Positions 20,274 to 64,000 of a stretch of DNA of 64,000 nt are shown piece after piece. The stretch comes from Oopsacas minuta (Eukaryota; Animalia; Porifera), in the NCBI GenBank assembly GCA_024704765.1, contig JAKMXF010000361.1, forward strand, positions 77,289 to 141,288, given 5' to 3'. The stretch's first letter is position 1, and every line of letters starts with the position of its first letter. The notes under the pieces were generated by a model that was not told the DNA's origin, ran no database searches, and saw only the letters and a list, made by a program, of their open reading frames with translations. The position numbers and the translations under genes are program-made.

Positions 20274-31913
<11,640 letters not shown>

Positions 31914-32192: not shown

Positions 32193-35100
32193 CTAAATTA
32201 AAGTTTCTTCTGATTCAATATCAATCAGTCCTGCAGCCTTCTTATAAACCTCAGTCTCTGCCGGACTGTACTCATTATATTTTCTAGACTTCCAATAACG
32301 ACAAGAATAATAGCAGGAAATGACAGCTATTAGGATAGCCAAAATAGCTATCAGAATTAAGCAAACTGAGAGTATTGATATTAGAATTACAGAAGTAGTG
32401 GTAATAGGGATATCGCATAGGGAGCCGGTATATCCATCTATACATTCACAGAGATAATGAGTAGAATTGAGATTACTGCAACCACCGTTTTGACACGGAT
32501 TTAAATAGCAGAAATCGGTCTTGTTACAAAATGTACCTCTCATACCGGGATTACACACACACGAGAATGTCCCACTATTCAAATCTTCACAAGTAGAATT
32601 CTCATGACATGTATGGTTATGACAAGCATCGATGTATTGGCAATATTCCCCCCTATATCCTAAATCACACTTACACATAGACTCATTATAAGTAATCTTC
32701 AGACAAGTACCATTATTACAATCTACCTCATCACAAGGATCAATTTCAAACTCACACATTACACCTGTATAACCAGGCTTACAGACACAAGAGTATGTAG
32801 TATTACCATCTACACATGAAGCATTGTTCTCACAAGAATTAGATATACAATTATCTAGTATTACATCACAATTGGTACCTGTGTAATCAAGGTAACATGA
32901 ACAGAAATAGTATGTACCACCCCCGTTACAAGTACCATTCTGACAAGGAGAGCTATCACACAGGTCCAATTCTGTTTCACATTGATCTCCAATGAATCCA
33001 TCAAAACATGTACAATCAAATCCGTTTACTCTATCAGTGCAATTACCATTCCCATTGCAAGAATCAAGCAAGCAATCGTTAATGTTCATTTCACAATCTT
33101 TCCCAGTGTAACCTACTTCACAAATACAATTGTAATCGCCGAATATTGGACTACAAGATCCTCTGATGCAAGGAGATGGTGAGGTGTTGCAATAGTTTAT
33201 TTCTGACTCACACTGATCGCCTGTGTATCCGGAATTACACACACAACTGAAGTCATTGAGGAGATCAAGACACTCCCCTCTCATGTTACAAGAGTTTTCC
33301 GTACAGTTAATTACGTCCATATCGCAATCGTTACCTGTGAACCCTACATCACAAGTACACATGTAGTTGTCAACTAGATCAGTACATGTTCCATTCACAC
33401 AGGGATCAGGAGAGCAATCATTGGTATTAATCTCACAAAACATACCAGTGTATCCAGGTTGACATTTACATCTGTAGCCATTAATTACATCCATACACTG
33501 TCCACCATTCATACATAGTACAGATTTGCATTCATCTATGTCTATTGTGCAGTTCCTTCCTGTGTAACCAGCAGCACACATACAAGAATAGTTCCCGTAG
33601 GTATTGGTACAATTACTCTGATTCTTACATGGATTAATTGATGACTCACACTCGTCTACATCTACTGTACAATTATTCCCTTTAAATCCTAATGTACAAT
33701 CACATGAATAACTCCCGTCATGGTTAGTACAATTTCCTTCATTCTGACAGGTATTATACAATGTACACTCATCCACGTCTACTGTACAATTATTCCCTGT
33801 GTAATTAGCAGGACAAATACACATGTAGTCACCTTCTGTATTCATACAAACACCTCCGTTCTCACAGGGCTCTGTATTGCATTCGTCTATGTCTATGGTA
33901 CAATTCGGACCTGTGTACCCAGAGAAACATTCACAGTAGTACGCACCCTGTGTGTCAGTACAGTTACCGAATAAACAAGGTTGTATAACTGTACACTCAT
34001 CAATATTAGAGTCACATAAGTCACCAGTATAACCAACATTACATACACAATTGAATGGAGTTGTTCCAATCATTTCACAAGTTCCGTTAAAACAGGGAAA
34101 AGCTTCACAAGGATTGACTAGATTATCACAATGCATTCCTGTGTAACTAGGAGTACATACACAAGTGTAATCGTTCACCCCGTCAATACAAGTACCGTTA
34201 TTCAAGCAGAGATCTAGATCACAATCGTCAATATTTATTTCGCAATTATTACCACTGAAACCATCCAAACATTCGCACAGCTTTTCAAAAATATCTGTTA
34301 ATGTATCTATACTACAAGTTCCGTTATTGTGACAAGGTTCTGCCTCACATAGGGTAAGTGAGCATGTAGGGGAAGTATATCCAGCTGTACAACTACAAGT
34401 ATACCCATCTGGTATTTCATTACATGTTCCTCCATTTTGACATGGAGAAGATTTGCAGGATTCAATTTCACAACTCTCTCCTTTATAAGTAGTGTTTGTA
34501 CACGTGCAATTAGCGTCTATAATTGTTGACAAGTTAGAGTACATAGGAACACACGTACCTCCGTTAAGACAAGAGCAATTGAAACAAACATCTAACAGAT
34601 CTAATCTCTCTATACTGCAGTTAGTACCATTATAGGAGCATGGACATTCACAATAGTATGAGTTTATACCGTCAATACAATTACCTCCATTCTGACAAGG
34701 ATTATGTATACAGTTATCTGTATTTATCTCGCACCTATTCCCTTCAAACCCTGTGTTACAATCACACATGTAACCAGGTGAGAGATTCATACAAGTCCCA
34801 TTCTCTGTACAGGGGAGCTGATCACACTCGTTAATATCCATATCACAGTAATCTCCTGTATACCCAGTAGAACAGTTACATAATACAGAAGAACTGTTAG
34901 ATATACATGTACCGTTATTACAGGGATCTATAGAACAGGGGTCTACTAATAACTGACAGAATGTACCAATCCTTCCTTCCTCACAAAATAATTCTCTGCC
35001 ATCATCTTCTACCAAATTATTTGATACGATATTGAAAATAGAATTATTATTACTGAATAGAGAGAATAGTGTATCCTGTACTATCAGTTGTCTTACTCCA

Positions 35101-38100
35101 CCAACATAACTATCTAATAGAACAAATAAATTAGATAATTACAGTAGAAACTCGTTAATAAGAAGAATACGGTTAATACGAACTAATACGATATCAGGTC
35201 TATAATGGATATCCAATAGGTATAACTCCGGTTAATAAGAACTCCAGATAAGGCGAACGACAAATTACTATAATAAAGGACTGAAGACTGCCAGCCTCAT
35301 AGCTTACTAGACATAAGACCTCACAGTAACTTGTGAATTTTGGACTAGGGATGTTGTTATCGGCCGAGGTATTTTTATGGGAGTTACAATATTGCAGAAA
35401 CGGAGCATTTTTGCCTGAATACGTTTGTAGAACAACAAATTTTCAAACATTATATGTTAAAAATTTCTTGAATATGCCATTCCACAAATATTTAGTAAGG
35501 CAATCAGCTATTCAACAATAATACATTTTCGTAGTCTAGCTTTAGCGGATTAGGAGATATCAGGAAAACATCATGGACCCAAGTTCCAGGAGCCGGCTTG
35601 GCAGCCTACAGTCCTTTATTATTGTAGTTTATGAGGGGAACAAATTTTGGCCGAGCACGTATTAACGAGGTTCCACTGTAACAGTTTACAATTCGTAGGT
35701 ATAATAGTCTACCTGCATTCATAATAGTACTATTAGCTCCAAGAAGTATATGTATAGAATAATTAGCATCTATTGGTAATGTGAAGTTGATCTTATCTGT
35801 AGTTTCATTCCCATCAATCCTGTATACAATCATATCAGTGTATAAACTCCAGCTGACTGAATGCAGTACTCCATTAGTTACATAATTGTCTGTACGTCGT
35901 GCAAAAAGAACTAGACATAACAACAGTTAATAAATAACCAATACAGTCAGCATATAAAAGGCAGACAATAAAAGATTTAATTAAGAAAAATGTGCAAAAT
36001 ATGGAGAGCTATGAAATATTATGCAGAATAGGGGAGGGTGCTCACGGAGTTGTATTCAAAGCTAAACATATTCAATCCGGCTACCACGTAGCCTTGAAGA
36101 AGATAGCCTTGAGGAAGATAGAGGATGGTATACCGAACAATATTCTTAGAGAAGTGAAGACATTAATGTCATTAGAAGAACACCCAAATATAGTACGGCT
36201 GTTTGAAGTGTTCCCACATGGTATGGGGTTTGTATTGGTATTTGAATTCATGCTCTCTGACCTATCCGAAGTATTACGTAATCACAGTATATTGCTATCA
36301 GAGGCTCAGATAAAGTGCTACATGTTGATGCTATTACAAGGAGTATCACATTGTCATAAACATAATATAATCCACAGAGACCTCAAGCCTGCTAACTTAC
36401 TGCTCAGTAGTTCTGGTCACCTTAAGATAGCAGACTTCGGTCTAGCACGTGTGCACTGTCTGGCAGAGGATAGACCTCAGTACAGTCACCAGGTAGCGAC
36501 CCGTTGGTACAGACCTCCTGAACTGCTCTATGGTGCTAGGGTGTATGATGAGGGGGTGGATCTATGGGGAGTGGGGTGTATCCTGGGAGAACTAATCAAC
36601 AGTTCTCCTCTGTTTCCTGGAGAAAATGATATCGATCAGCTGTGCTGTGTAACCAGGATATTGGGAACTCCGAACGAGCAAGTTTGGCCAGGGCTCTCAG
36701 ACCTACCGGACTATAAGAAGATTACATTTCCTGAGCTCCTTCCGATCCCACTCCACAAAATAGTCCCAGACGCTGCACCCCTTGCACTGGACCTCCTAGA
36801 AAGCTTCCTGGTATATGTGTCAAAGAGGAGACTCCCAGCTGTTAGAGCTTTGATCCATCCTTACTTCTTCTCCGAACCTATCCCAGCGCACCACACACAA
36901 CTCCCTTCACCTAGGACACTCCCCAAGAGGGATCTGTTCCAGATATTTAGCAGTGCTGAATTTGACCCCAGCCTCCTAATCCATCCCTCTAAGATCCCCT
37001 CTCATGTAATAGCAGTAACCACACCCACTCAAACACGAAAGATACCCAAGCAAATAACAAGCAAAAAGTCTACTACCGACAAGAATAGTAAATTCTAACA
37101 TGCACTTATATTATGTTACTATATTAATCGTAAAATATTTGTAATTCTAACAGGTTCACTCACTCTGATTATTCACTGATACTATCATTACAAGAAATCC
37201 TTCTTGTACATGGAAAATAACAATAAGAGATTCATTCCCTGTAATATAAATTGTAATCAGGAGTTGAGCTTCAAAGTCTCTTGTCCTGAAAGCAAAGCTT
37301 CCGCTAAACTTTGTTACAACAGGGAACATATCCAGACTTATGTAGACGTAAGAATCAGCTGAGAATAATGCAGGAATATCTAAAACAGAATATAGTACTA
37401 GTGATATACACAGGAAAAAGGACAACATACAAGGCCGTTGCAAGCAGATTAAAATTGGTCAGGTTAACTATACAAAATACATGGAGCTACCAAAAGTTGG
37501 TCCCGTTTACTAATTGAATTAGTAGTTCTGTTGTATGACAGTTTAACTACCTCTATTACCAGAACCATAGATATTTGAATTTTAGGACAGTATAACGGGA
37601 GCCCCAGTTTAACTACCCTAATTTTCTCGTATTATACTTACAATTACATATACACTTCAAAATATCATAAATACGAGCCGCTTCGCTTGCGAACATTATG
37701 TGTTCGTATGTAACTCGGCACTTCGTGCCTTGTCAAAATGGAAGATCATGTAATGAAATTCGGAATCAGCGTATCTTGTTTCCCGATTGCGGCTGTTAAG
37801 AGCAAGTCTCTACGTTTATTTTAAGATTTCAACTATTTGTTTAATTTATATTTGTTATGGGAAATGTTGGCGATGTACACAATATAGCTTCAATTATGCA
37901 TTAGTATGGGTTTAAGACGAACTACATGGCTCCTGATTATTCAATCCGTAGACTCCAGCACTATTCATTAATCATTTTACCCTAAAAACGTTCATTGTCA
38001 GACTGTATCAAAATTGTGAAAATTGGAAAAACACTTCCTTACGTCCTATGTGAAAATTTATGATATTTAAGTATAACATGTGAAAATTATGGTAGGTAAA

Positions 38101-41100
38101 CAGTCATACAGTTCGTCTGATTGCAAGGAATATTGAAATAACGTTGTAGAGAATAACTACTGAAAATTACTTAATGAAATTACCAAATTTCCCTATAACC
38201 AGGTGTGTTTGCAGGAATATTAGGAGGGAAGGGGGTTGAAACTACAAACCCCTAATAGACCACACTGGGTTGAAACCTGACCAACCGGACCGTCTCCGAC
38301 GACCATGACATATAATATACACTATTCAAATTTCGTACTAGTCCTCACCTTGTTCACACAATTCTCCAATATATCCAGCAAAACAGTTGCAGGTGAAATC
38401 AGTAGTAGTGATTCTAATACAATCTCCGTTTCCACTACAAGAGCTGTATTCACAAGGATCTATCATAATTTCACACGTAGGTCCTGTGTAGTTAGAGTTA
38501 CAGTCACAAGAGAAAGAACCTAATGTGTTGATGCAAGTACCAGCTGATGAGCAGGGAGATTCCATACACTCATTTACGTCATCAGTACAAGTTAATCCTG
38601 TAAATCCTTCTAAACAAGAGCAAGAGTATGAGCCATTATTATTCATACAAATTGCATTGTTCTGGCATGGAACAGGTTGTATACTGCATTCATCAATATC
38701 AAATTCACAATGTGGCCCTAAAGAGAAGTAGATAACTACTCTTATGAGCCCTGGGTAATAATTTCGAAAAATTATTAGCAAGGGCTCAACCAATATACAG
38801 TGATAGAAGTTTGAAATTTGAATCACAGGTACTCCTCAATGTGCCAAATGTTCTGACGTCGTGATTTTGGCTAAATTAAATTAATTATGGGATTATTACA
38901 TCACCATGACTGTACAAAAAGATATTTTGAGAATTTAATAGTACTCGAAGCACAAAGTGCAGATTACTACCGAAGAAGGCAAATAAATGGAATTTGGATG
39001 GACCATGGATAAAAAGTACATTTCTGCCATTTCATACACTCGAGGCAAGAAGTGCCGAGTATATTCCGTCGCATAGCGACCAGAAGTACTAAGAAAATTA
39101 GCTTTTAAATACTTAAGCTAACCTGAGGTACTAAGCTGTCGCGTAGCGACCGAGCAAGGGGAGCACGCTAGTATTGTCATAAGACCAAAATAGGCCACTT
39201 TAATCACAGAGATATTTGTGTAACTTTTTGTCAGTTGATCTTCTATGGGCAATTAACCAATCTAAACCAACAAGACAAAACTTGGAACCGAGACCGACTA
39301 GTCAACTTGGGTGTGGTCATGATAGTTTAGAATTTTATACAAGGTGTGACCATAGCCCGCAAGAGTTTGAAACCTTGCTGTAATTGTTAGTTAAACAAGT
39401 ATATACTACGTAGAATGTTAGCAACCCACCTGTATACCCGATAGTACAATTACAAGTGAAATTCCCTCCGTCATCCTGCTGGCAAATTGCTCCATTCTCA
39501 CAAAGAGAGTACAAACAAGGATACAGAAACACGTCACATAGACTGCCAGTGAAATTCTCACCGCAAACACATACAAATCCATTAACAACATCTAAACATG
39601 TAGACCCATTCAGACAGGGGTTACCAATGCACTCATCGATATCAAGTTGACAGTCTACACCCGTGTAACCGGGGTCACACTGACAAGTATAGGAATTCTT
39701 CCCGTTAACACACAGGCCGTTTAAACAGGGAGAGGATGAGCACTCATTAACATCTTCCTGACACATCAACCCTGTGTAGCCAGAAGGACAGTAGCACTCA
39801 AATCCAGACCCTACTGGAACACAGTGACCTCCATTCACACATGGAGAGGAGAGACATTGATTCACTTCTTCTGTACAGTTTGTACCTGAGATAGAGAGAG
39901 AATGATAATCGCTCAGTAATAGTTTTAAACATTGATTACATATTAGCCATTGGATAAGTCGTTCCTTATCCGAGTTACATGCTATTCATATTCGTAATAA
40001 CGAGTCTACTGTAGTGAGCATCGAGAAACATCAATAATAGATTAATAAATATGAATAAATCAAACAGACTATATTAAGATAAATAAGACTGAGTAGCAAC
40101 GAGTATAACATAATATTATTTTAATTCCCCTTCATCTTCTCTTTGAGACTCAGCAGGTGTTTCAGGAGGAACATATAGAGGATTCTGCTTAGCAAGGAGT
40201 GATACTAGCTCAGTACATACATGCTCGTCCTCCTGGAATAGATTGTTTTTCAATGAGACTCTCAATAGTCCTGGTTTATATGTATTCTTAGGTTCTGTTG
40301 TCTGCCACATAACAGCAGCTATTAATAAAGATACACTCTCTACTGACATTAAGTTATAAGATAGGTTTAAGCTGAGTAGAGTCATATTCCCTGGAATAAA
40401 TATCTGCTTTTCTCTCATAGATACCTTCTCCAGGAGAGGGTTAGCATACTCAATAGTATCTTGTTTATCAGAATCTATTTGTTCCTGAGGCCTCTTAGCT
40501 ATCTTACTGCCAGCACGTTTCTTAGCACTTTCCACATGTTTAGCTTTTGTTCTTTCAACAGGTTTGGCAGATTTTTCATCTTTTGGTAAGTTCTTTGAAG
40601 TAGCAGTAGCCTTATGTGTAGTAGAGCGTAGTTTAGCAGAACTAGTGCCATCAGGAATAGGGGAGGGAGTACCTTGATGGATACCTAGCTTATTAGGACT
40701 GTCTACAAGTTCTCTTGTGTGAGGATTTTCAGCTGTTAGAGTAGCAAATATGAGAGTTCTACGCTCCATTATTTCTTCATGAGTTAGTGGAAACTCTTGC
40801 AATACAGACTTAGATAAGAAATCTGTCATAACATCAGTGAGAGCGTTACCAGCTAGAGAGATACCGTGTAGAGTTCTGTTTGTTCTAAGTCCCTTCACTA
40901 TATCAATACTCTTAGTGTCATCCAGTTGGTTGTTGGATAAATTCAAGAATATCAGAGATTTATTCTTCCTAAGAGCATTACCTATAGCTATACACTGAGA
41001 AGATGAGAGAGCACATCCACGTAATGAGAGAGTATCAAACACAGATCTCTCTTGTGTGAGGAGAACACTAAAGTCTCCCTCAGGGATAGGGTTACCGTCT

Positions 41101-44100
41101 AGATTGAGCCGTTTAAGAGAAGTGAGACTAGCAGTTAGTGTAGCTAGCTCAGATAGAGTCCTCTTACTCATTCCTACATTCCATAGAGAGAGAGATTGTA
41201 ATTGAGGATAGAAAGGAAAACATACAGACAGTATATTTAACAGCTGGGAGGTTAGCTTATAGCCTCTGAAAGAGAATTGTTTCAACGTAGACAAGTCATG
41301 TTCATCTTCATAACAAACTTCAATACGTGGAGATATATATTCTGCATTAGGAACAAGTTTGTAGCTGTGAAGGGATGAGATATCTTCGTGCTTTGCTCCG
41401 TTAGAAGAAGAAAGTTTTTCTTCAGAAGATCGAGGCTTATGAACTACAGGTATTTCATATATTCCCTCTTTCTTACAGAGTTTAGTGAAGTCTTCAGGGA
41501 ATATACCTTTAGGAGTGTAGACAGAGTCATCTTCTGTGCCCTCTTGAGTGGGGTTAGGCGTTTTTAACTTTTCACTTTTCTTGCGCATTCTACTCTTTGT
41601 TAATTATGTAATTTGTTAGAACACCCTCACTGATCCGAACAACACTCCAATTACAAATAAATTGTTAGGATTCGTGAAATGCATTGAATTAATGCTATAG
41701 TAAGCTTCGGATTTAACAACATTGGTTCTAGCGACAAATCGCTTATAACGACACTTACTCTAGCCCATATATCTCCAGCAATATTTCTACACACCATACT
41801 TCAGGTATAATGACATGTTAGATAAGGACACTTCGGATATATCGACACTTTTCCATGCCTGATGCATCTAAATTACATCGGAAATTACGACTTTGGCGAA
41901 TTTTATACTGTGTAATGCAGAAATGCTTTCTGTATATGCAGGAACTTAGCAAAATCAGTCTAATTTGTAAATAATTGGGTTTGTATTTATCTAACTATAC
42001 AGAATATACCATTAAACTTCTCTTGTTTTGAATCATACATTTTCCGTCTAAACAAATGGAAACGCATTTAAATATAGTCATTATGTACAATGTAATTTCG
42101 AATAATTTCTAAACCTACATATCATCATCCTTATAGATTCAGGCGGAGTTGGCTAACGGAAGCGACAAGTATTGAGTAATCTATATTACACTTACATGTA
42201 CATACAGCCTTTATGCAACTATATATTACTCATTATACTAATATCACCAAACTTGTTCGTCATATGTATAGTTTGGTTTTCGCATGAGCGTTGCAACATA
42301 TTAAAATGAATGTATTTGGAGTCCATCAAAGTATATACTATATACAATACATTCGGAGTAACTTCGGATTTAGCGACACATCCTATATAACGAGCTATTT
42401 TGCTTGCCCAAATGAGTGTCATTAAATCCGAAGTTTACTGTAGTTCAGTTTTCCGAACAAACGATGAAAAGGGTGCCAACATGTGTAATTCAGTATTATG
42501 TATTTGTTCGCAGTAGAATTGGACACAGCACGGGAAATAAAAAGAACATTATTGAAAATTTTCCAAAGGTTTTGTATCAATTAGGGCCTGTTCGGATTAG
42601 CGAGGGTCTACTGTAATTAAAATAATTAGACATCAAACTAACATTAAATAAATGAGAATTATTGATACAAATATAAAGTAACCAGTTCATTCTCATTAAT
42701 CAATAACATTACTGTTAATATAATATATTCACTTCTCGTAGGGAGAGGATTCATTGTCAGGATGTTCAATATCACTTTCTGAGTCTGATTCATTCGGACC
42801 ACGAGCCTTATGGTGAATACAACAACAATTAGATTTCTTCTTCCCCATGTGTTCGTTATCAATCACATCTTCTGACCATTTAATCTCCTTTTTAGGTTTC
42901 TTCTTAAGTATCAATATTTGTTTAGAATCAGTGGGTTCAGTAATCTTAGTAGTAGTAGTGGTAGTAGTAGTAGCTGTAGTGGGAGTCTTAGTGGTCTTTG
43001 TTCTTGTTGACATTTAGCTAGTTTTACTTAATTAAACAAATAAATATTTAAATAAAAATAAATGCCCAGCTATAATAATAAAGAGAACACAATACTCAAA
43101 TAGGCAATTTAATATACAAATGTGAGAGTAGTGGCCAAGTACATTACATCACTACCTACTGAGTCTGGTAAAATTCGCTACTCACAAGGGTGATCATATA
43201 ATCGACAACTACATTACCACACTTGCATATAATATATACGTTAAATTTGTTTATATCCATAATTGTCCACCAGTGAGTTAGGACTTAGGAGTCATATATG
43301 CACTATTAGGGGAACTGATGTTTTATGAAATTAAGTAACCAACTTGAATGAACTATTGAGTACAGATTATGGATAATTACTATTAGACAACACTTATTGT
43401 AGTGAGTAAATAATTACAAGACTAAGCATTTAACTTTAATACATAGCACATCGTGACTTACTACAATAAATGTACGAATAATAAACATCAGAGGCTAGGT
43501 AATCAAATACGATGTATGCAGGAGAGCATGAGAGACAGAGAGACAGCTGTTGTAATAAACACAAACAGAGCAAATAGGATAGACCAGATAGGTTCACGAT
43601 AACAGTACACATACAGAGTACGTTGGTAGTAATATTCGGTCGAGACGAAGCTAGAATTATAGTAAATTACGTCAAAATTTGAATGAGATAATTCTGAAAA
43701 GGAAACAATATAATCGATTGTTCTTAAAGATGAATTATTCACAAAAAAGTGGTATTTTTGTCCTGATATCGCGACATTGCGTAATAATAACCAGTATCCG
43801 AAGCTTTACAATATGATAGATAACAGTGAATATATCGAGGATATACGCAAAAATCTAAATCGAAGAGAAACAACTTAGGAGCCACGTATCTATCAGATGT
43901 GTTATGAAATGGATTCAGCTGGAATACAGTAGAGTTAGCAATCATCCAAATACACATGTAGGTTATATTCTGATATTTGGTAGTAAATGGTTGTAGCTTT
44001 GCTTGTATTATTGTCATATTTCAAGCCTTGTAGGTAATCTAAACAACCATAATTCGAATTAGGCAGATGATAAGAAGAATTAAATTTATATTTACATATG

Positions 44101-47100
44101 ATTGGCTGGTTGTTCAACTGAGAATTCTATGTAAGGACAATCTTGTGATGGTTTATATACTTCACCTCTTGCTATTGGGACTCTACTAGAATATGTCTGT
44201 ATCATGAGCGGAGATAGAAGCAAAGAATACAATACACTAACAGTAGTAATGATAGATATATAAGCTACTAACATAGCTCTATCTTTGAGCTTTTAGAAAG
44301 TATGATGAAGATGATCCTGATTAGTCAATGTAGGTGTGTCGTCAGTTTTCACATCAGCTGTGTGGAATCCTGAGAACTTTACCTTAGTACGGTCACGGAA
44401 AACTAACCATACAATAACAATAAAGAGAGAGCATAGGATGCTTGGGAGGAATGACAAGATGGATAACACCATCATAGCGTATTTATCACAATTTGAATCA
44501 AGCTTAGATGACCGGATATGTAATCTCCATCGGTTGAGGAATTTCCTATTAATAAGTTTCAATACCATTTGCTAAGACATAACAGTAACCAGAGAAGAAT
44601 ATTAACGAAATTATAAACATTTCAATGAAAGAGAAAACGTTTAGAGAGTAAGTTCCCCAGGCGACTGTCCTTAAGAGTCTAAAAGCGCGTACTTTGTCTT
44701 CATAGCGATATCTCTCCAGGTACTCCGTGTTTATACCTCTAATGAAATCCTTTATGTACTTAGTAGCAGTTCTTAATGTCATTCTTACAAATGTGAATAC
44801 AAAGAAAAGTCGACTGAATGTGTCAAATAGATAGAATATGCCGAATATAACCGAAGATAGAGAAAATAATCAAAAATAAAGATGGTTACGAAATATGAAA
44901 TTAACAAAGACAATACATTCCCAATGTTGAATTCCAAAAGAAATAAGTACACCAATCGGAAGATAATAAAAGTCAAAATTCTACTGAAATAAAACTTCTT
45001 CCTTTTCAAATAGTTAGCGATTTGTAACAACAAACTAGGACCAAACAACACTATTCCTTCTTGGAGAGCGAAAGAAATGGAACCTACAACATAACTGATT
45101 TGGAATTGATGGTCTCATACGTTATTAGTAACAGAGACTGACAAATAGATTTGAAATATTACATTAAACACGTTGAACCCTGAAATGCATAGAACTATTC
45201 CTAAAGAAACGCTTGAAAATGTTGGTAGTAGGCAGTTATTATCTGCTTACCATCAGGATCAGGAGTGTGGTATTTAACTATGTTACGATATTTTAAAACT
45301 TGCATAATTAACTGACCAGCTAAACGTGTGTTGACTGGGATAGTAAGGAAACAGAAACGGAGAATAGGATAGAAATGACCAGCACGTAGTATTGATTTTC
45401 CGTGTTATTGCAAAGATCATAATTGCGTTCTGTAACACAAACAAGAAATAACTGGTAAACATTTCAAATTCTAGTATCAGTAGTCAATGATAGTACTTCA
45501 TAAGATGAATCACACAACTCATAATGCATACTGTAGATATATGGAGTATCGCATTCCATTTGCTTGAATTCCTTAAAGGACTAGTGTACCAACAGGATTA
45601 TAGGAGGTGTGTACCTCTTTATCTGATGTAAATGGTGGAACGACGAAATTTGTATTCTTAATTGGAATACGTATTAACTCATTGAAAAGTGTACAACAAA
45701 TATGTCTATTATCAATCCGGATCAGAGTACTAACCCTGTTGGAAATAATAAAGTTATATTGCATTAAATAAAGATTAAGCGGGCACCAAATTAATATACT
45801 CTGACATAACTCTATGTAAAATATATTAATTAAGTATAATGGAGAATTATGTTGGGTACTATATTGACTTGTGCGTCCCTTGGAGATTGAGACCCGACCA
45901 AATGGCCCCCCATAGCGCACAGAGGTACTGTATAACAGTGTATATACAATAACAATATATAAAACTACCTGTGTATGTCTCGGTACAAGTACAGTTATAA
46001 CTGAACTCAGTAGTAGTACACACTCCACCATTCTCACAAGGAGTAGGGTCACAAGGATTGAATATTGATTCACAGCGGGCACCAATAAATCCACTAGGAC
46101 AGTCACAAAAGAGTTCGGTTTCTGACAGCTGACATGCGCCATTATTCTCACAAGAATCTGGTTGACATGAAATACACGAACTACCTAAACAAATGGTCAT
46201 AACTGTTAATACAAATACAAAATCTTACTAGAGAACATGGGAGGATATCGTATATATAAAATAATACTATAAGAGTATATGCTTATGTGAAAAATTTGTA
46301 AATACAGTGATATTCTCAAAAAAATGAGCACTTTATATAAATTTCATCTAGTTGGGCTTTACAAGGCAAACATCAACATTCACAAAAGTTAAACAAATAT
46401 TATTCCCCTGCATATGATCCTGGGTAGCTCGTAAAGCAGTAATACATACCGGATTGTATAGAGTCCTGTGGACAGCTGCAGGTAAAGTTACAGATAGAAT
46501 TGTTGAGTAAGGTATCACATGAAGGATCACAAACTGAATCTGATTCACATTGAGAGCTTGATAAAATGCTATAGAGAAACAACAAATTTAGGTTTAACTC
46601 AAACTTAAATGAAATACAAGAATAACTACAATCAGTCAATCTGAATACTAATGTTAACCTGCTATTAGAAGTAGGTGTAAGAACATTAAGGAATACAGGC
46701 TGATCTAAGTAGACAGGGTTGCTGATACAGCCTCTACACGCAGAAGAGGAAGTGGAAGGGAAATAAGTTAGTGTTGAATCGTAGCCAAGAGTTATTTCAT
46801 TCTGAGGGGAGAATATATTACTGAGGCTTGGGTCTACAATACAATAAAACATAATATATCAAATGTTAATACATACGCATGATTTCTTGTGGTCAAGGTC
46901 ATGAAATTATGTTTGGATCGCATAATATCTTATATTATTGGTAGCGAATTCGCTAAGAATAACCAATACAGTATTACTAAATGATTTGAAAGATCTCGAA
47001 TAAAACAGAAATATTAAATCAATATACGAGACCTTTAAGTTTGACTATGTAGGTATACTTCCAATTTTTCACTTTCTAAATTAGCATACGTCCATTATTG

Positions 47101-50100
47101 TCGCCCTTAATCTAGGAGAACGCCACACAACCATGGCCATGATATGGCCGCAAAATTGAAGGAATAATGTATATGGGGTGAAAACCCAAACATATGTATA
47201 GGAGCAAAAGATGTGTCCCAAGCGTGCGGAATAATATTATAAGATGACATAATGTAGGATATTAAATATTATTATTACCTGTATACTCTCCTATCTGGTT
47301 ACTATCCAACAGTAGAATAACATAATTATCAGATCTAACAAGTAGTATAGTGTGAGGAGAGGAATCATTTATAAAGACAGAAGACTGTCTAACATATAGC
47401 TGGTTAATCTGTAAGTTTACCAAACCATCTGTTAGAAAAACGAGTAGATGAGAAGATGAGTTAGTACCAAGCTGTATCAAGATGCAGTCACTCACTCTAC
47501 AAGATGCAATGACTATTGAGTATATTCAGATAGTATATAGTAATGCTGGTAATCCTGCCATTGGATATTTTGAAATGTTATTCTTTCGTATATATCTATA
47601 TTATTAAATCTCAATTGTTGTTTGTTTGTTTGTCCGTTGTCAAGGAAAGGATTTAAGGTACGGTATGCAATTTTGAATTTTCGCATAGCTATGTATTTAT
47701 CGTGTTTATCAAGGAAGTAATTAGAATTCAATAAAACTTCACAGAATATATCGAAAATGCTGAATCCGATTTTCACACTTTTGGATTAATCATATGTAAA
47801 TTTAATGTTGTTTTTATGAATATAAAGTAAAATCTCAAAATTGAGGGAAAATCATACTTTCGACGACTATACTGGGGTATTCGAGTATGTTGAGGCTGAA
47901 TATTGTAAACAATATCAATGCGTTGAATACCTCGAGGGGCGATCTGACGAGCCAAAGGCTCGTTGTTTTGTATATTTTAAGACAAAATGAGACTGTTAAA
48001 TTAAAGATGGAAATTAATCAAGAATAACACTGGTCGTAGTTAGTGTATCAGACCTGGGCCTGACCAATGGCTATGGGACTTCTGGGGAATTTCTCGGCTG
48101 CCACACGCTAATCCGTCCCTGCTTGTAGGTATGCATAAGTTGAATATTCGATAAGTGATTTATTACTAAATACAATACATATATTGCAAAATACAAGTAA
48201 CTAAGAATTGATTTCTTCTCGTGGCTGTGTAACTATATCTGAACAGATCTCAAGTCTTGATAAGACCCTCTCCTTCCCTAGAATACTAACCAGATTCCCG
48301 ATAGTTGGACCCTTATAACAACCTGATAAAGCTAGACGTAACAATGTAAGGAGCTCTTGAGTACTAACGTGTAGCTCCATGGCCCATTTTGAGTAGGATA
48401 CCTCAGCCAGGTCCTGAAAGAAATCCAGATTCCTGAACTTGCTAATTACATTCAGTAATAAGTCAGGGAGTGAATCAATAGAGATAGAATCAGTGTATGC
48501 TAGCAAGAGATCAGGTGTAGGGTTCTTCCAGAAGTAGCTGTGTTGTTCTGTTATCTCCTTCAGCAATATTATGCGAGTAGGGAAGGCTTGTAATACACTT
48601 TCTATATACTGTATGTTCCTATATTCATCTGGAGCTGAGGGATAGTAATCTGTTTGTGAAAGAAGTTCTTCTAATTCAGATACCAAACTACCTCTTAGTT
48701 TGTCATCTGTTATCAGTCTATCTAAATGCATCTTATTATACCAACCAAACTTCCTAAGAGAAACTCCAGCATTGCTAGTGTGAATATCATTCAGATTAAA
48801 ATTCTCAATCAATTCCTCACGAATGAATAACTCTACCTTGTTCTTCGGTTTGAATGTAATGAGAGAGACTGCATTGATCACAGCTTCGGGTAGGTAACCT
48901 TCGTCCCTAAAGAATTGTATGCTCGTGTCAGCACGTCGCTTGGATAGTTTAGTTCTGTTTGTCTCGTCTACGAGTAGAGGGAGGTGGGCATAGATAGGTA
49001 GTTCCCAAGATAAGTAATTGGATAAAACCGCGTGTATTGGCAGAGATGATATCCACTCAGCGCCTCTTAACACATGACTTATTTCCATTAGATGATCATC
49101 CACTACGTTAGCCAGGTGGTATGAGGGAAATCCGTTAGATTTCAATAAGATGACGTCATCTAATTTGGAGTGATCAAAACTAATACAATTGAATACTTTG
49201 TCATTTACAGTTACGAATCCAGATTCTGGGGTCTTCAATCTGACCACGTGACTAACATCCTCAGCCTTTTTCCTAGCCTCTGAGGGATCTATACGTCTAC
49301 AGCCACAACGTTCTACTTTCAAAAATGTAGGTATAAATATATCCCTCTTCGGAGGACAGAAACATTGATAAGCATTATTCTCCTGCAATAATTGGGTAAC
49401 AAATTTCTTGTAAATGTCAAGTCGTTGAGATTGGTAGTAAGGGCCATGCCCTCCTTGAGTAGGAAGGTGAGGTCCTTCATTGAACTCTATTCCAAGCCAT
49501 TTCGTTACGGATACTAGGTTTTCAACAGAATTGGGTACTGTACGAGTTGGATCAGTGTCGTCAATCCGGAGAATTAACTGCCCCTTGTTCTGAACTGCGT
49601 AGAAATAGTTGTACAGAAGCGTGCGAAGGCCTCCAATGTGTAACAGCCCTGTGGGACTAGGAGCAAAACGGAGACGATGCATATTTGCTAATCCTCAAAA
49701 TTAATACAATATAAATAGAGCTAGTCACATACAACTAAATTACATGTATAGTCCCACATAGATATAAACTATTAAATATACTCATATTTTTTATAACTAT
49801 AGTACAATATGGAGAGAGCCAAGCATCTAATAGCTATAGTTTTCTTACATTCTCGAGGTTATTCCGAGTTTCTAAAACTATGTACGGGGGCGCTGCATTA
49901 GGTCGAATTCTGGTGTTGGCATCAGGTCGAATTCTGGTGTTGGCATCAGGTCGAATTCCGTGTGTTGGTATTAGGTCGAATTAAGACATTGTGATAGATA
50001 GAATTTATTTTAGCTATGTTGTCGATAGATCGATATAGAAAATGGATTTATGAAAACGAGGACGTGATAGGACATTTTATTGTATTAATTATAAACCCGT

Positions 50101-51187
50101 ACCATTGGGAGGGGATTAGGGATTTTGTTCACTACCTTATCGGTCTGGGAGTTTTCACTTGTACTCGTTATTAAATTACCTAGGGGCGGGGATGTGGAGT
50201 CCATGCTAATTTTGTGTTTGGATGGACCTTTGTTGGATTAATTATTAGAAAAATTTGCAAAATGGGGGATCGCTAGATGTTTTGCTTTTAAAACGTTTGT
50301 GCAGGTTTTTTAGATATTTAAGGAAGCATTCAGTGTTTCTCAAAATATGTATTGGCCTTAAAAAAGAGATATTCATAGCTAATATACATTCGCTCTATCG
50401 ACAACATAGCTAGAATAGAATCCGACTAATGCAACATATTTAATTTGACCTAATTCATACATATTAAATTCGACCCAATGCCAACGCCATAATTCGACCT
50501 AATGCAGGCGCCCCCTATGGGCATGTGACATTCGTGGAAATCTAATTCTATTTCTTGTAATATAACCTTGAATCATTGGCGCCAAGTTTTAGGAAACAAA
50601 ATCAAACCTTGGGGGTCTCGCTCTCCAGGTATCCAAAACTCGGCAAATATACTTTGAATCTCTCAGCCACTCTCACATCTGAACCTGCATCTGGAGTAGC
50701 CATAGGAGGTACAATTAGAATCAAATAAATCTAGTGTATAAAATTAGAGCGTGTTTCGAGGTATTACATAAATATACCCATAATTATTTCTACTTGGGCA
50801 GTCTGTATTAATTCGAGTTCTTTTGAAATCGAATTGAATTGAATTACCATCGAAATTTGTCTAACGATGACTAAAAGCAGCTGTTAGCTAAATAGGTAGT
50901 GTAATATTAATTGATTATTGAGTAGTGACGAAAATATTCAATTCAATTCAGAATAGTATAAACGGATATCTCTTCTTCAATTTTAGGTTAATTTTCTTGA
51001 TCTTTGGCAGATATTATCATCACATCAAGTTCTATCTACTCAATGCTATTTATCATTTCCGGTGTTATCACTTGGGTAATTCTGACAGTTTCCCGATTTA
51101 ACAAAAAGTGGATATTTTAATGATAAATAATGTAAAAAAAAATTAGGAACGCTTCACGATTATGCGTGTCATCCTTGCGCAGGGGCC

Positions 51188-51227
<40 letters not shown>

Positions 51228-63356: not shown

Positions 63357-63464
63357 CTAAGCACTAATGTATGAATCTGCTGTGACAGAGGCGAGTGCGT
63401 CATCTCTAGCCTGATCTCTCATGTCTCGCTCAGAACCTTCTTCATCCTCACTCTCACAAGAAAG

Positions 63465-63534
<70 letters not shown>

Positions 63535-64000
63535 AACGAGTTAGAGGGAGTGAGGAACTCAACCCCCTGTGAGAAGAATAGCTCAGTCATGTCTACCGAC
63601 AACTTTCTTCCACAATCCCTCAGCTTCTGAGACGTGTAACGAGACACAACACCCTCCTCAAAGTCACCCTCACTTAGATAGGAAGTGACCTCTGAGATAT
63701 CACTATCATCTTCATCAGAAACAGCCATTCGTATTGCCTCAAAGTCATGAGGTTTGTCACCTAGTGAGTAGTGCTGGTCTACTGCTTCAGACACAGAGAA
63801 GGCTTGAGCATCGATCAGATCAGGATTCTGATAATTATTGATGACACGATTCAGAGAACTCAGACCAGATTGTATTAGATAATCACTATTGAGTGATCGA
63901 GCTGCACGAAGAAACTTCAGCATGTGGTAGAGACGTGTTTCATTCTCTGATACCAGAGAGGCTACCTCTGAGTATATCTCTTCCCTCACTTGATCGAATG
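63357..64000 (-). CDS. PCM1: Pericentriolar material 1 (PCM1) C-terminal region, 5' part beyond right edge
   Basis: FDQVREEIYSEVASLVSENETRLYHMLKFLRAARSLNSDYL resembles PCM1 TIYSEVATLISQNESRPHFLIELFHELQLLNTDYL; SRYTSQKLRDCGRKLSVDMTELFF resembles AKFAGRKLKDCGEDLLVEISEVLF. The frame is open to the window edge. Confidence 0.82.
63465..63533 (-). repeat. (CAA)23 microsatellite encoding poly-Gln in PCM1
   Basis: 69 nt of uninterrupted TTG on the plus strand, in frame as CAA codons. Confidence 0.95.

What the first reader, a model, noticed from the sequence alone, without database searches (positions are those of the whole stretch)
32193..59903. One 27.7-kb Crumbs-like gene hosts five protein genes, two Pol III genes and a pseudogene in three introns
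Exon phases join perfectly across an 11,097-bp intron (47497-58593: EARS2, U6, actin-like, tRNA-Met), a 6,083-bp intron (39886-45968: LRRC71, PPP1R11, membrane-protein pseudogene) and a 1,253-bp intron (CDK20). The guests include presumably essential functions (mitochondrial translation, splicing, PP1 regulation), so host and guest transcription must coexist. Nested genes as such are known; this density and the mix of strands and polymerases in a single host is unusual.
Basis: seen in the sequence. Interest (0 to 1): 0.75.

Follow-up and report, generated by a model that had tools for sequence, protein, structure and literature searches.

The report
Glass-sponge Crumbs gene hosting nested genes
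In the glass sponge Oopsacas minuta, the single Crumbs cell-polarity gene spans 27.7 kb because three of its introns hold five other protein genes, a U6 gene, a tRNA gene and a decayed gene. This gene-within-gene layout is already known to be common in glass sponges.

Summary
The window is the end of a 141,288-bp contig of the glass sponge Oopsacas minuta (61.46 Mb, 365 contigs). On the minus strand, 11 GT-AG exons (59903-32193) give an open 5,625-nt CDS of 1,874 aa with three LamG domains, about 30 EGF repeats, a membrane span and the published hexactinellid Crumbs tail ending in ETLI.

No RNA could be reached. Support for the joins is structural:
- The two exons flanking the 11-kb intron are the top two LamG matches among 1,902 six-frame segments. 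They abut on adjacent positions of a Crumbs LamG profile.
- The 6-kb intron cuts an EGF repeat just before its sixth cysteine, at the same position as an ordinary intron.

All guests are real: CDK20, LRRC71, PPP1R11, mitochondrial-type GluRS, a divergent actin, U6 (the only copy found in the assembly) and an elongator tRNA-Met. The 'pseudogene' is a run of frame-broken ORFs of unknown family.

The claim that this density is unusual fails. Nested genes are published as common in glass sponges, and this scan already found hosts with 5 to about 15 guests on other DNA of this genome. This is an ordinary new example of a known layout.

The parts
59397..59903 (-). Host exon E1: start codon, signal-like hydrophobic stretch, most of LamG-A
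   Evidence: ATG ORF. Donor CAG|GTATTG. Best LamG3-profile hit in the window. No paralogue in the genome.
58594..58823 (-). Host exon E2: end of LamG-A and first strands of LamG-B; last exon before the 11,097-bp intron
   Evidence: Acceptor TTTAG|ATT, donor AGCAA|GTAAGT. CRB2 LamG2 profile positions 6-37 align to its last 33 full codons.
47279..47496 (-). Host exon E3: middle of LamG-B; first exon after the 11,097-bp intron
   Evidence: Acceptor TCTTGTAG|AG, phase 2. Pfam Laminin_G_2 positions 6-76, E 2.6e-4. CRB2 LamG2 profile positions 40-99, E 4e-5 over 1,902 segments.
46659..46833 (-). Host exon E4: end of LamG-B (..ACRGCISN..)
   Evidence: Phase-1 acceptor TTGTAG|AC and donor AGCAG|GTTAAC. 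Weak profile match to the LamG C-terminal end.
46450..46568 (-). Host exon E5: cysteine-rich, EGF-like
   Evidence: 90-nt intron upstream, GT-AG, frame kept.
45969..46184 (-). Host exon E6: two EGF repeats, the second lacking its sixth Cys; last exon before the 6,083-bp intron
   Evidence: Pfam EGF. Ends ..CTCTETYTG| with donor CACAG|GTAGTT.
39430..39885 (-). Host exon E7: supplies |TNC.. (the sixth Cys) and four EGF repeats
   Evidence: Acceptor TCTCAG|GT, phase 1. Pfam EGF and EGF_CA. Ends ..GYTG| just like E6.
38349..38717 (-). Host exon E8: |PHC.. and three EGF repeats
37164..37379 (-). Host exon E9: first half of LamG-C (..FAFRTR..)
   Evidence: Second-best LamG3-profile hit in the window.
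35713..35910 (-). Host exon E10: middle of LamG-C
   Evidence: Acceptor GTCTAG|TT, phase 1. Colinear weak profile match. Donor GCAG|GTAGAC.
32193..35113 (-). Host exon E11: end of LamG-C, about 22 EGF repeats, membrane span, 35-aa tail ..[14 protein letters not shown], stop
   Evidence: Pfam EGF 4.6e-89. Tail read; it matches the hexactinellid Crumbs variant described in PMC5968619.
36001..37098 (+). Guest 1: intronless CDK20, antisense to the host; fills 1,098 of the 1,253 intron bases
   Evidence: Pkinase 7.8e-63. Atlas first hit is cyclin-dependent kinase 20, score 1.00, TM 0.83-0.85. This exact protein is in NCBI/UniRef for this contig.
40116..41588 (-). Guest 2: intronless LRRC71-like, same strand as the host
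   Evidence: Weak LRR Pfam hit. Atlas top clusters are all LRRC71, score 0.97, 212 of 256 shared features.
42729..43013 (-). Guest 3: PPP1R11/Ypi1 phosphatase-1 inhibitor, same strand as the host
   Evidence: PF07491, 7.2e-19.
43506..45114 (-). Run of seven ORF pieces in shifting frames: probable decayed gene, family unknown
   Evidence: frames 0,1,0,0,2,1,2, with one in-frame stop. No Pfam match. No paralogue.
48201..49682 (-). Guest 4: intronless mitochondrial-type (bacterial-like) glutamyl-tRNA synthetase, same strand as the host
   Evidence: tRNA-synt_1c 9.9e-81 plus Anticodon_2. Single copy in the genome. Six relatives at 63-78% identity, then bacterial GluRS at about 40%.
51138..51241 (-). 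Guest 5: U6 snRNA gene (Pol III), same strand as the host
   Evidence: Rfam RF00026, 112.6 bits. Only copy found in the 61.46-Mb assembly. Upstream TATATAAATA and a T9 terminator.
55836..56981 (+). Guest 6: intronless divergent actin, antisense to the host
   Evidence: PF00022, 4.7e-116. Full-length match to actins in the PDB, 492 bits.
57476..57549 (-). Guest 7: elongator tRNA-Met(CAT) gene (Pol III), same strand as the host
   Evidence: ARAGORN and Rfam, 67.2 bits. G1:C72, TTCGA T-loop and a T5 terminator read.

Best explanation
This is the single Crumbs gene of the glass sponge Oopsacas minuta. It is one transcription unit of 11 exons over 27.7 kb, and three of its introns each hold independent genes.

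Shown here:
- The exon chain is open.
- All borders are GT-AG and in phase.
- Protein domains run across each guest-bearing intron.
- Every guest is an intact gene of a recognisable family.

Inferred:
- RNA polymerase II reads through the whole span, and the spliceosome removes the guests together with the introns.
- The protein-coding guests are made from their own starts. In glass sponges these starts are probably capped by spliced-leader trans-splicing.
- U6 is made by Pol III from its upstream TATA-type promoter. The tRNA is made by Pol III from its internal boxes. Both end at T runs that do not stop Pol II.
- Host transcripts must ignore the poly(A) sites of the three same-strand protein-coding guests.
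- CDK20 fills its intron so tightly that its untranslated ends must overlap host exons in antisense.

The layout is one more case of the nesting that is general in compact glass-sponge genomes. It is not a special device of this locus.
For: Genome identity:
- G000 has 61,460,524 b in 365 contigs. O. minuta is 61.46 Mb in 365 contigs (PMC5968619; PMC10282587 Table 1).

Host identity:
- EGF and LamG ectodomain, a membrane span, and a 35-aa tail with Y-S-P and a C-terminal ETLI. This is the hexactinellid Crumbs variant published in PMC5968619.
- No paralogue in the genome.

Gene model:
- 11 exons, 5,625 nt, no internal stop.

11-kb intron:
- E2 and E3 are the top two LamG2-profile hits among 1,902 segments.
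- E2 covers profile positions 6-37 and ends at its last full codon. E3 covers positions 40-99 and starts one residue into the exon. This leaves exactly two positions for the split codon and the first residue.
- No other segment inside the intron matches.

6-kb intron:
- It splits ..CTCTETYTG|TNC.., so the EGF repeat gets its sixth Cys only after the join. The position and phase are the same as at the ordinary E7/E8 intron..GYTG|PHC...

CDK20 intron:
- It splits LamG-C between ..SVNNQ and ILFARR...

Other points:
- E3 and E7 start in mid-domain, with no start codon or signal peptide.
- Guests.
- Linkage is old.
- Nesting is general in glass sponges (PMC10282587).
Against:
- The E2 profile match is weak on its own (8.9 bits, E about 0.1 over the window). 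Its weight comes from rank and exact adjacency.
- No Crumbs orthologue from another glass sponge was found, so conserved nesting in relatives is untested.
- Three same-strand guests carry their own 3' ends, which could cut host transcripts short. Shorter isoforms from internal starts cannot be excluded.
Confidence: 0.88

Rival explanations
1. The exon groups E1-E2, E3-E6 and E7-E11 are two or three separate EGF/LamG genes that merely lie in a row, with ordinary genes between them.
For: - No RNA evidence for the long joins was obtained (closed; empty).
- The public annotation holds CDK20 as its own gene and lists few nested genes (PMC10282587), so it probably does not model one long host.
- Same-strand guests with their own 3' ends lie in the way.
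Against: - LamG-B would be cut after about 35 residues, and the rest would have no start codon or signal peptide.
- An EGF repeat would lose its sixth Cys.
- All phases match and the 11-exon chain has no stop.
- Reading through the E2 donor hits a stop at once.
- Sponges have one Crumbs gene (PMC5968619).
Confidence: 0.06
2. Assembly misjoin: unrelated DNA carrying the guests was spliced into the Crumbs locus by the assembler.
For: The window is the terminal 64 kb of its contig. The long introns carry dispersed repeat pieces that could mislead an assembler.
Against: - No gaps in the window.
- Host exons on both sides of each long intron are in the right order, strand and phase.
- CDK20 and GluRS are linked on the same contigs in at least six other assemblies.
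- The assembly used PacBio plus mate pairs at 381x coverage (PMC5968619).
Confidence: 0.02
3. Operon-like use: the same-strand guests (GluRS, PPP1R11, LRRC71) have no promoters of their own. They are cut out of the Crumbs primary transcript by spliced-leader trans-splicing and polyadenylation, in competition with cis-splicing of the host.
For: - Spliced leaders are reported in glass sponges (PMC10282587; scan notes).
- An AG lies 1-15 nt before each guest ATG and before the host ATG.
- The PPP1R11-LRRC71 spacer is 1.1 kb and partly repeat-derived.
Against: - An AG within 15 nt is expected by chance in more than half of cases.
- No leader sequence or RNA was examined here.
- The antisense guests and the Pol III genes need their own promoters in any case.
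- The earlier follow-ups listed saw no need for a new mechanism.
Confidence: 0.15

Closest known systems
Nested genes of glass sponges (Francis et al. 2023, Aphrocallistes vastus genome, PMC10282587)
   Same: - Mostly single-exon guests lie inside introns of a multi-exon host in a compact hexactinellid genome.
- The paper counts 2,432 nested genes (12.4% of genes), many of them conserved with O. minuta.
- It notes that the O. minuta annotation under-calls them (83).
   Different: This particular host (Crumbs) and its guest set are not described there, as far as the text searched shows. Two of the guests here are Pol III genes, and one of them is the only U6 found in the assembly.
Oopsacas minuta Crumbs (Belahbib et al. 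2018, PMC5968619; GenBank MF959458)
   Same: Same genome (61.46 Mb, 365 contigs), single-copy Crumbs, ETLI instead of ERLI, and a FERM-binding motif reduced to Y-x-P.
   Different: That paper treats the protein and its motifs, not the gene's layout. Its record could not be fetched here to compare exon content.
Classical multi-guest host genes (Drosophila dunce, human NF1 with OMG/EVI2A/EVI2B; from general knowledge)
   Same: Several complete genes on either strand lie inside introns of a long host, each with its own transcription.
   Different: The scale is far more compact: 27.7 kb in all, and the guest CDS (5,484 nt) nearly equals the host CDS (5,625 nt). One guest fills 88% of its intron.
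Other multi-guest hosts found by this scan in the same genome (NUP205, Twinkle, Dicer, VPS13, EXD2)
   Same: Same genome, same layout, 5 to about 15 guests, guests on both strands.
   Different: Those are unchecked AI notes on other DNA. None of the summaries shown mentions Pol III guests.

Membership tests
Crumbs | Ectodomain of EGF repeats interspersed with laminin-G domains | tested here: met
   Pfam EGF on E6, E7, E8 and E11, and Laminin_G_2 on E3. Profiles built from 71 Crumbs proteins hit E1, E2, E3 and E9. 29-31 EGF cysteine motifs.
Crumbs | Single membrane span followed by a cytoplasmic tail shorter than 40 residues | tested here: met
   Read from the E11 translation: a hydrophobic span, then 35 residues. 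The criterion comes from PMC5968619.
Crumbs | FERM-binding motif RxxxGxYxPS | tested here: not met
   The tail has [10 protein letters not shown], so only Y-x-P is kept. This is exactly the reduced form published for hexactinellid Crumbs (XxxxXxYxPX). It fits the lineage's orthologue but not the canonical motif.
Crumbs | C-terminal PDZ-binding motif ERLI | tested here: not met
   The tail ends in ETLI. This is the hexactinellid-specific replacement published in PMC5968619.
Nested (intronic) gene arrangement | Each guest lies wholly between a donor and an acceptor of the host | tested here: met
   Coordinates. All guests fall inside introns 35911-37163, 39886-45968 or 47497-58593.
Nested (intronic) gene arrangement | Host exons are really spliced together across the guests | not testable with these tools
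   No RNA was reachable (closed; empty). Indirect support only: domain continuity.
U6 snRNA gene | Match to the U6 covariance model above the gathering score, with an ACAGAGA box, upstream TATA and a T-run terminator | tested here: met
   112.6 bits against 44, model positions 1-105. GATACAGAGAAGATTAGC, TATATAAATA at about -30 and T9 read.
Mitochondrial glutamyl-tRNA synthetase (EARS2) | Bacterial-type class I GluRS catalytic and anticodon-binding domains encoded in a nuclear genome, with a mitochondrial presequence | tested here: inconclusive
   Domains are met, and the nearest non-sponge relatives are bacterial GluRS at about 40%. No N-terminal presequence is visible: the ORF starts [12 protein letters not shown], as do six relatives of equal length.

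The most novel reading that the evidence does not exclude
The Crumbs transcription unit could double as an operon-like precursor. On this reading, the three same-strand protein-coding guests are released from the host's primary transcript by spliced-leader trans-splicing, in competition with host cis-splicing. Crumbs output and guest output would then be mechanically coupled. In addition, the genome's only detectable U6 gene sits in an intron that U6 itself must help remove.
Probability: 0.12. Interest if true: 0.55.

Novelty: new member of a known kind. Interest (0 to 1): 0.25.

Why it matters
The value is mainly practical.
- It gives a checked 11-exon model of the only Crumbs gene of a glass sponge.
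- It places seven real genes inside that gene. At least one of them, the mitochondrial-type GluRS, seems absent from the public protein set, and probably three more are too.
- This matters because the O. minuta genome paper argues from missing genes, and nested genes are where its annotation is weakest.

Biologically, the locus is a compact example of sense and antisense Pol II genes and two Pol III genes sharing one host. It could serve to study transcriptional interference, or spliced-leader processing, in an early-branching animal. It does not point to a new kind of system.

Tried and rejected
I could therefore fetch neither RNA-derived contigs nor the related sponge contigs.
- Word search with the 981-aa last exon and the full representative search returned only generic EGF proteins, at most 52% identical. 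No self hit, no ETLI-ended orthologue. The 52% hit, P0129, is an unrelated repeat protein.
- Word search with exon E3 found no candidate.
- The metagenome scan with CDK20 gave 79 loci, at most 71% identical. None has Crumbs exons beside the kinase, so it gave no synteny.
- Own-genome searches with E1, E3 and two pseudogene pieces found no paralogues.
- Pfam at E up to 10 sees no LamG in E1, E2, E9 or E10. Home-made Crumbs profiles were needed.
- I considered that intronless guests might be contaminants or retrocopies. I rejected this because most O. minuta genes are single-exon (9,872 of 16,340) and the guests have orthologues in relatives.
Exons were searched one by one. They were concatenated only inside a local script, to count length, stops and cysteine motifs, and the sequence was not printed.
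- The contig is not human.

Full report
**What the window is.** The sequence is AT-rich (about 36% GC) and eukaryotic. It is the last 64 kb of contig C361 of an assembly of 61,460,524 bases in 365 contigs. The contig is 141,288 bp long. Two papers give exactly these figures for the glass sponge Oopsacas minuta: 61.46 Mb in 365 contigs (PMC5968619; PMC10282587 Table 1). I take the genome to be O. minuta. It is not human.

**The guests.**
- Rfam finds a full-length U6 at 51138-51241(-), 112.6 bits against a cut-off of 44. Rfam and ARAGORN both find a tRNA-Met(CAT) at 57476-57549(-).
- The U6 has the ACAGAGA box, a TATATAAATA about 30 nt upstream and a T9 terminator.
- The tRNA has G1:C72 and a TTCGA T-loop, so it is an elongator tRNA. 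It ends in a T5 run.
- Pfam identifies a protein kinase (35992-37098, +), a PPP1R11/Ypi1 inhibitor (42729-43013, -), a class I GluRS with the bacterial-type anticodon domain (48201-49682, -) and an actin (55836-56981, +). It gives a weak LRR match for 40116-41588(-).
- The Atlas look-alikes name the kinase CDK20 (score 1.00, TM 0.83-0.85) and the LRR protein LRRC71 (0.97).
- The actin matches solved actins over its full length at 492 bits, so it is a divergent actin and not an Arp.
- GluRS has six relatives at 63-78% identity and equal length on long ENA contigs. After those come bacterial GluRS at about 40%.
- U6 and GluRS are single copy in the assembly.
- The 'pseudogene' is seven minus-strand ORF pieces of 63-109 codons tiling 45114-43506. 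They lie in frames 0,1,0,0,2,1,2 with one in-frame stop. It has no Pfam family and no paralogue. A decayed gene is the likeliest reading. 'Membrane protein' is unverified.

**The host model.**
- I rebuilt the model from the sequence. It has 11 exons with canonical GT-AG borders: E1 59903-59397, E2 58823-58594, E3 47496-47279, E4 46833-46659, E5 46568-46450, E6 46184-45969, E7 39885-39430, E8 38717-38349, E9 37379-37164, E10 35910-35713 and E11 35113-32193.
- The introns are 573, 11,097, 445, 90, 265, 6,083, 712, 969, 1,253 and 599 bp.
- The chain is 5,625 nt (1,874 aa) with no internal stop and 29-31 EGF cysteine motifs.
It was built only inside a local script for these counts and was not printed.

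The case rests on domain continuity, tested exon by exon.
- *11-kb intron.* I built profiles of the LamG domains from 71 Crumbs proteins returned. I searched all 1,902 six-frame stop-to-stop segments of the window with them.
  - For LamG2 the two best hits are E3 (20.0 bits, E 4e-5, profile positions 40-99) and E2 (8.9 bits, E about 0.1, positions 6-37).
  - E2's alignment ends at its last full codon. E3's alignment starts at its second residue. The two profile positions left over are exactly the split codon and E3's first residue.
  - No segment inside the intron matches.
  - Reading through the E2 donor gives a stop at once.
  - E3 starts in mid-domain, without a start codon.
- *6-kb intron.* E6 ends ..CTCTETYTG and E7 begins [10 protein letters not shown]. 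The EGF repeat gains its sixth cysteine only after the join. The ordinary 712-bp intron E7/E8 cuts at the same place and phase (..GYTG|PHC..).
- *CDK20 intron.* E9 carries ..FAFRTR.. and the first half of a LamG. E10 carries the middle of it. They match the profile colinearly, though weakly.
- *Misjoin.* There are no gaps in the window. The order, strand and phase of the exons argue against a misjoin.
The neighbourhood is therefore old. Whether Crumbs exons flank the guests there could not be checked.

**Which gene is the host?** It has LamG-LamG, then EGF repeats, then a LamG, then about 22 EGF repeats, a membrane span and a 35-residue tail..[19 protein letters not shown]. Belahbib et al. 2018 describe exactly this for hexactinellid Crumbs: ETLI in place of ERLI, a FERM-binding motif reduced to Y-x-P, and a single Crumbs per sponge. 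Their O. minuta record is MF959458. So the host is the known O. minuta Crumbs. It departs from the canonical motifs in the way already published.

**How it most likely works.**
- *Shown:* intact host, intact guests, guests wholly intronic.
- *Inferred:* Pol II crosses the 27.7 kb, and cis-splicing removes the guests with the introns. The protein-coding guests use their own starts. U6 uses its TATA-type upstream promoter and the tRNA uses its internal boxes, both with Pol III. Host transcripts must pass the 3' ends of three same-strand protein-coding guests.
- CDK20 occupies 1,098 of the 1,253 intron bases, 90 and 65 nt from host exons E10 and E9. Its untranslated ends must therefore overlap Crumbs exons in antisense.
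- Guest CDS (5,484 nt) nearly equals host CDS (5,625 nt).
- An AG lies 1-15 nt before every guest ATG and before the host ATG. This fits the spliced-leader trans-splicing reported for glass sponges (scan notes). On six genes it is not significant, and no RNA was checked.

**Comparison with what is known, and novelty.**
- Francis et al. 2023 report 2,432 nested genes (12.4% of genes) in Aphrocallistes vastus, many of them conserved. They list only 83 in the O. minuta annotation, and they attribute low counts in some genomes to the gene-modelling programs.
- This scan has already reported, on other DNA of the same genome, hosts with 5, 6, 8 and about 15 guests. I did not test those notes.
- The density here is therefore ordinary for this organism.
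- What is particular to this locus:
  - The host is the single polarity gene Crumbs.
  - Two guests are Pol III genes.
  - The U6 is the only copy found in the assembly.
  - The exact ORFs of GluRS, LRRC71, PPP1R11 and the actin are not in the 15-billion-protein collection. CDK20 and the non-nested neighbour at 30108-31430 are there, from NCBI, for this contig.
  - No O. minuta GluRS of 271-863 aa appears in the word search.
- These guests are probably missing from the public annotation. That matters for a genome whose paper argues from missing genes. It remains a probable reading, because the tools may leave out records of the window's own genome.

**Verdict.** This is a new member of a known kind, of low to moderate interest.

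Noticed in passing
window 35911-37163: The CDK20 CDS (36001-37098, +) fills 88% of the host intron. Only 90 and 65 nt separate it from Crumbs exons E10 and E9, so its promoter and 3' end must overlap host exons in antisense.
   Followed up: partly
window 51138-51241: This U6 is the only U6 found in the whole 61.46-Mb assembly, by both Infernal and BLAST. Either the sponge has a single U6 gene, sitting inside an intron, or a multi-copy array was collapsed in the assembly.
   Followed up: partly
window 48201-49682: The mitochondrial-type GluRS ORF starts directly at the catalytic core ([12 protein letters not shown]), with no visible presequence. Six relatives have the same length. How it reaches the mitochondrion is open.
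   Followed up: no
window 48201-49682, 40116-41588, 42729-43013, 55836-56981: The exact ORFs of GluRS, LRRC71, PPP1R11 and the actin are absent from the public protein collection. CDK20 and the neighbour at 30108-31430 are present from NCBI for this contig. These are probably unannotated nested genes.
   Followed up: partly
window 41655-41700 and 42582-42637 versus 52561-52606 and 52359-52414: Pieces of one dispersed repeat (80-87% match, inverted) lie in both long introns. One copy sits between PPP1R11 and LRRC71.
   Followed up: no
window 49883-49982 and 50419-50517: Two tandem arrays of 24-25-nt units in inverted orientation, 533 nt apart, lie 200-800 nt upstream of the GluRS start.
   Followed up: no
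window 54146-54305: Three 59-60-nt repeats, each holding a near-palindromic GGGGCACCCCC core, lie in the 11-kb intron.
   Followed up: no
window 59904-59925; 49683-49700; 43014-43025; 41589-41600; 55820-55835; 35980-36000: An AG lies 1-15 nt before the start codon of the host and of each protein-coding guest. This is compatible with spliced-leader acceptors but not significant on six genes.
   Followed up: partly
window 63357-63989: A minus-strand ORF with a run of 22 glutamines sits at the very end of the contig. The window's end is the contig's end.
   Followed up: no
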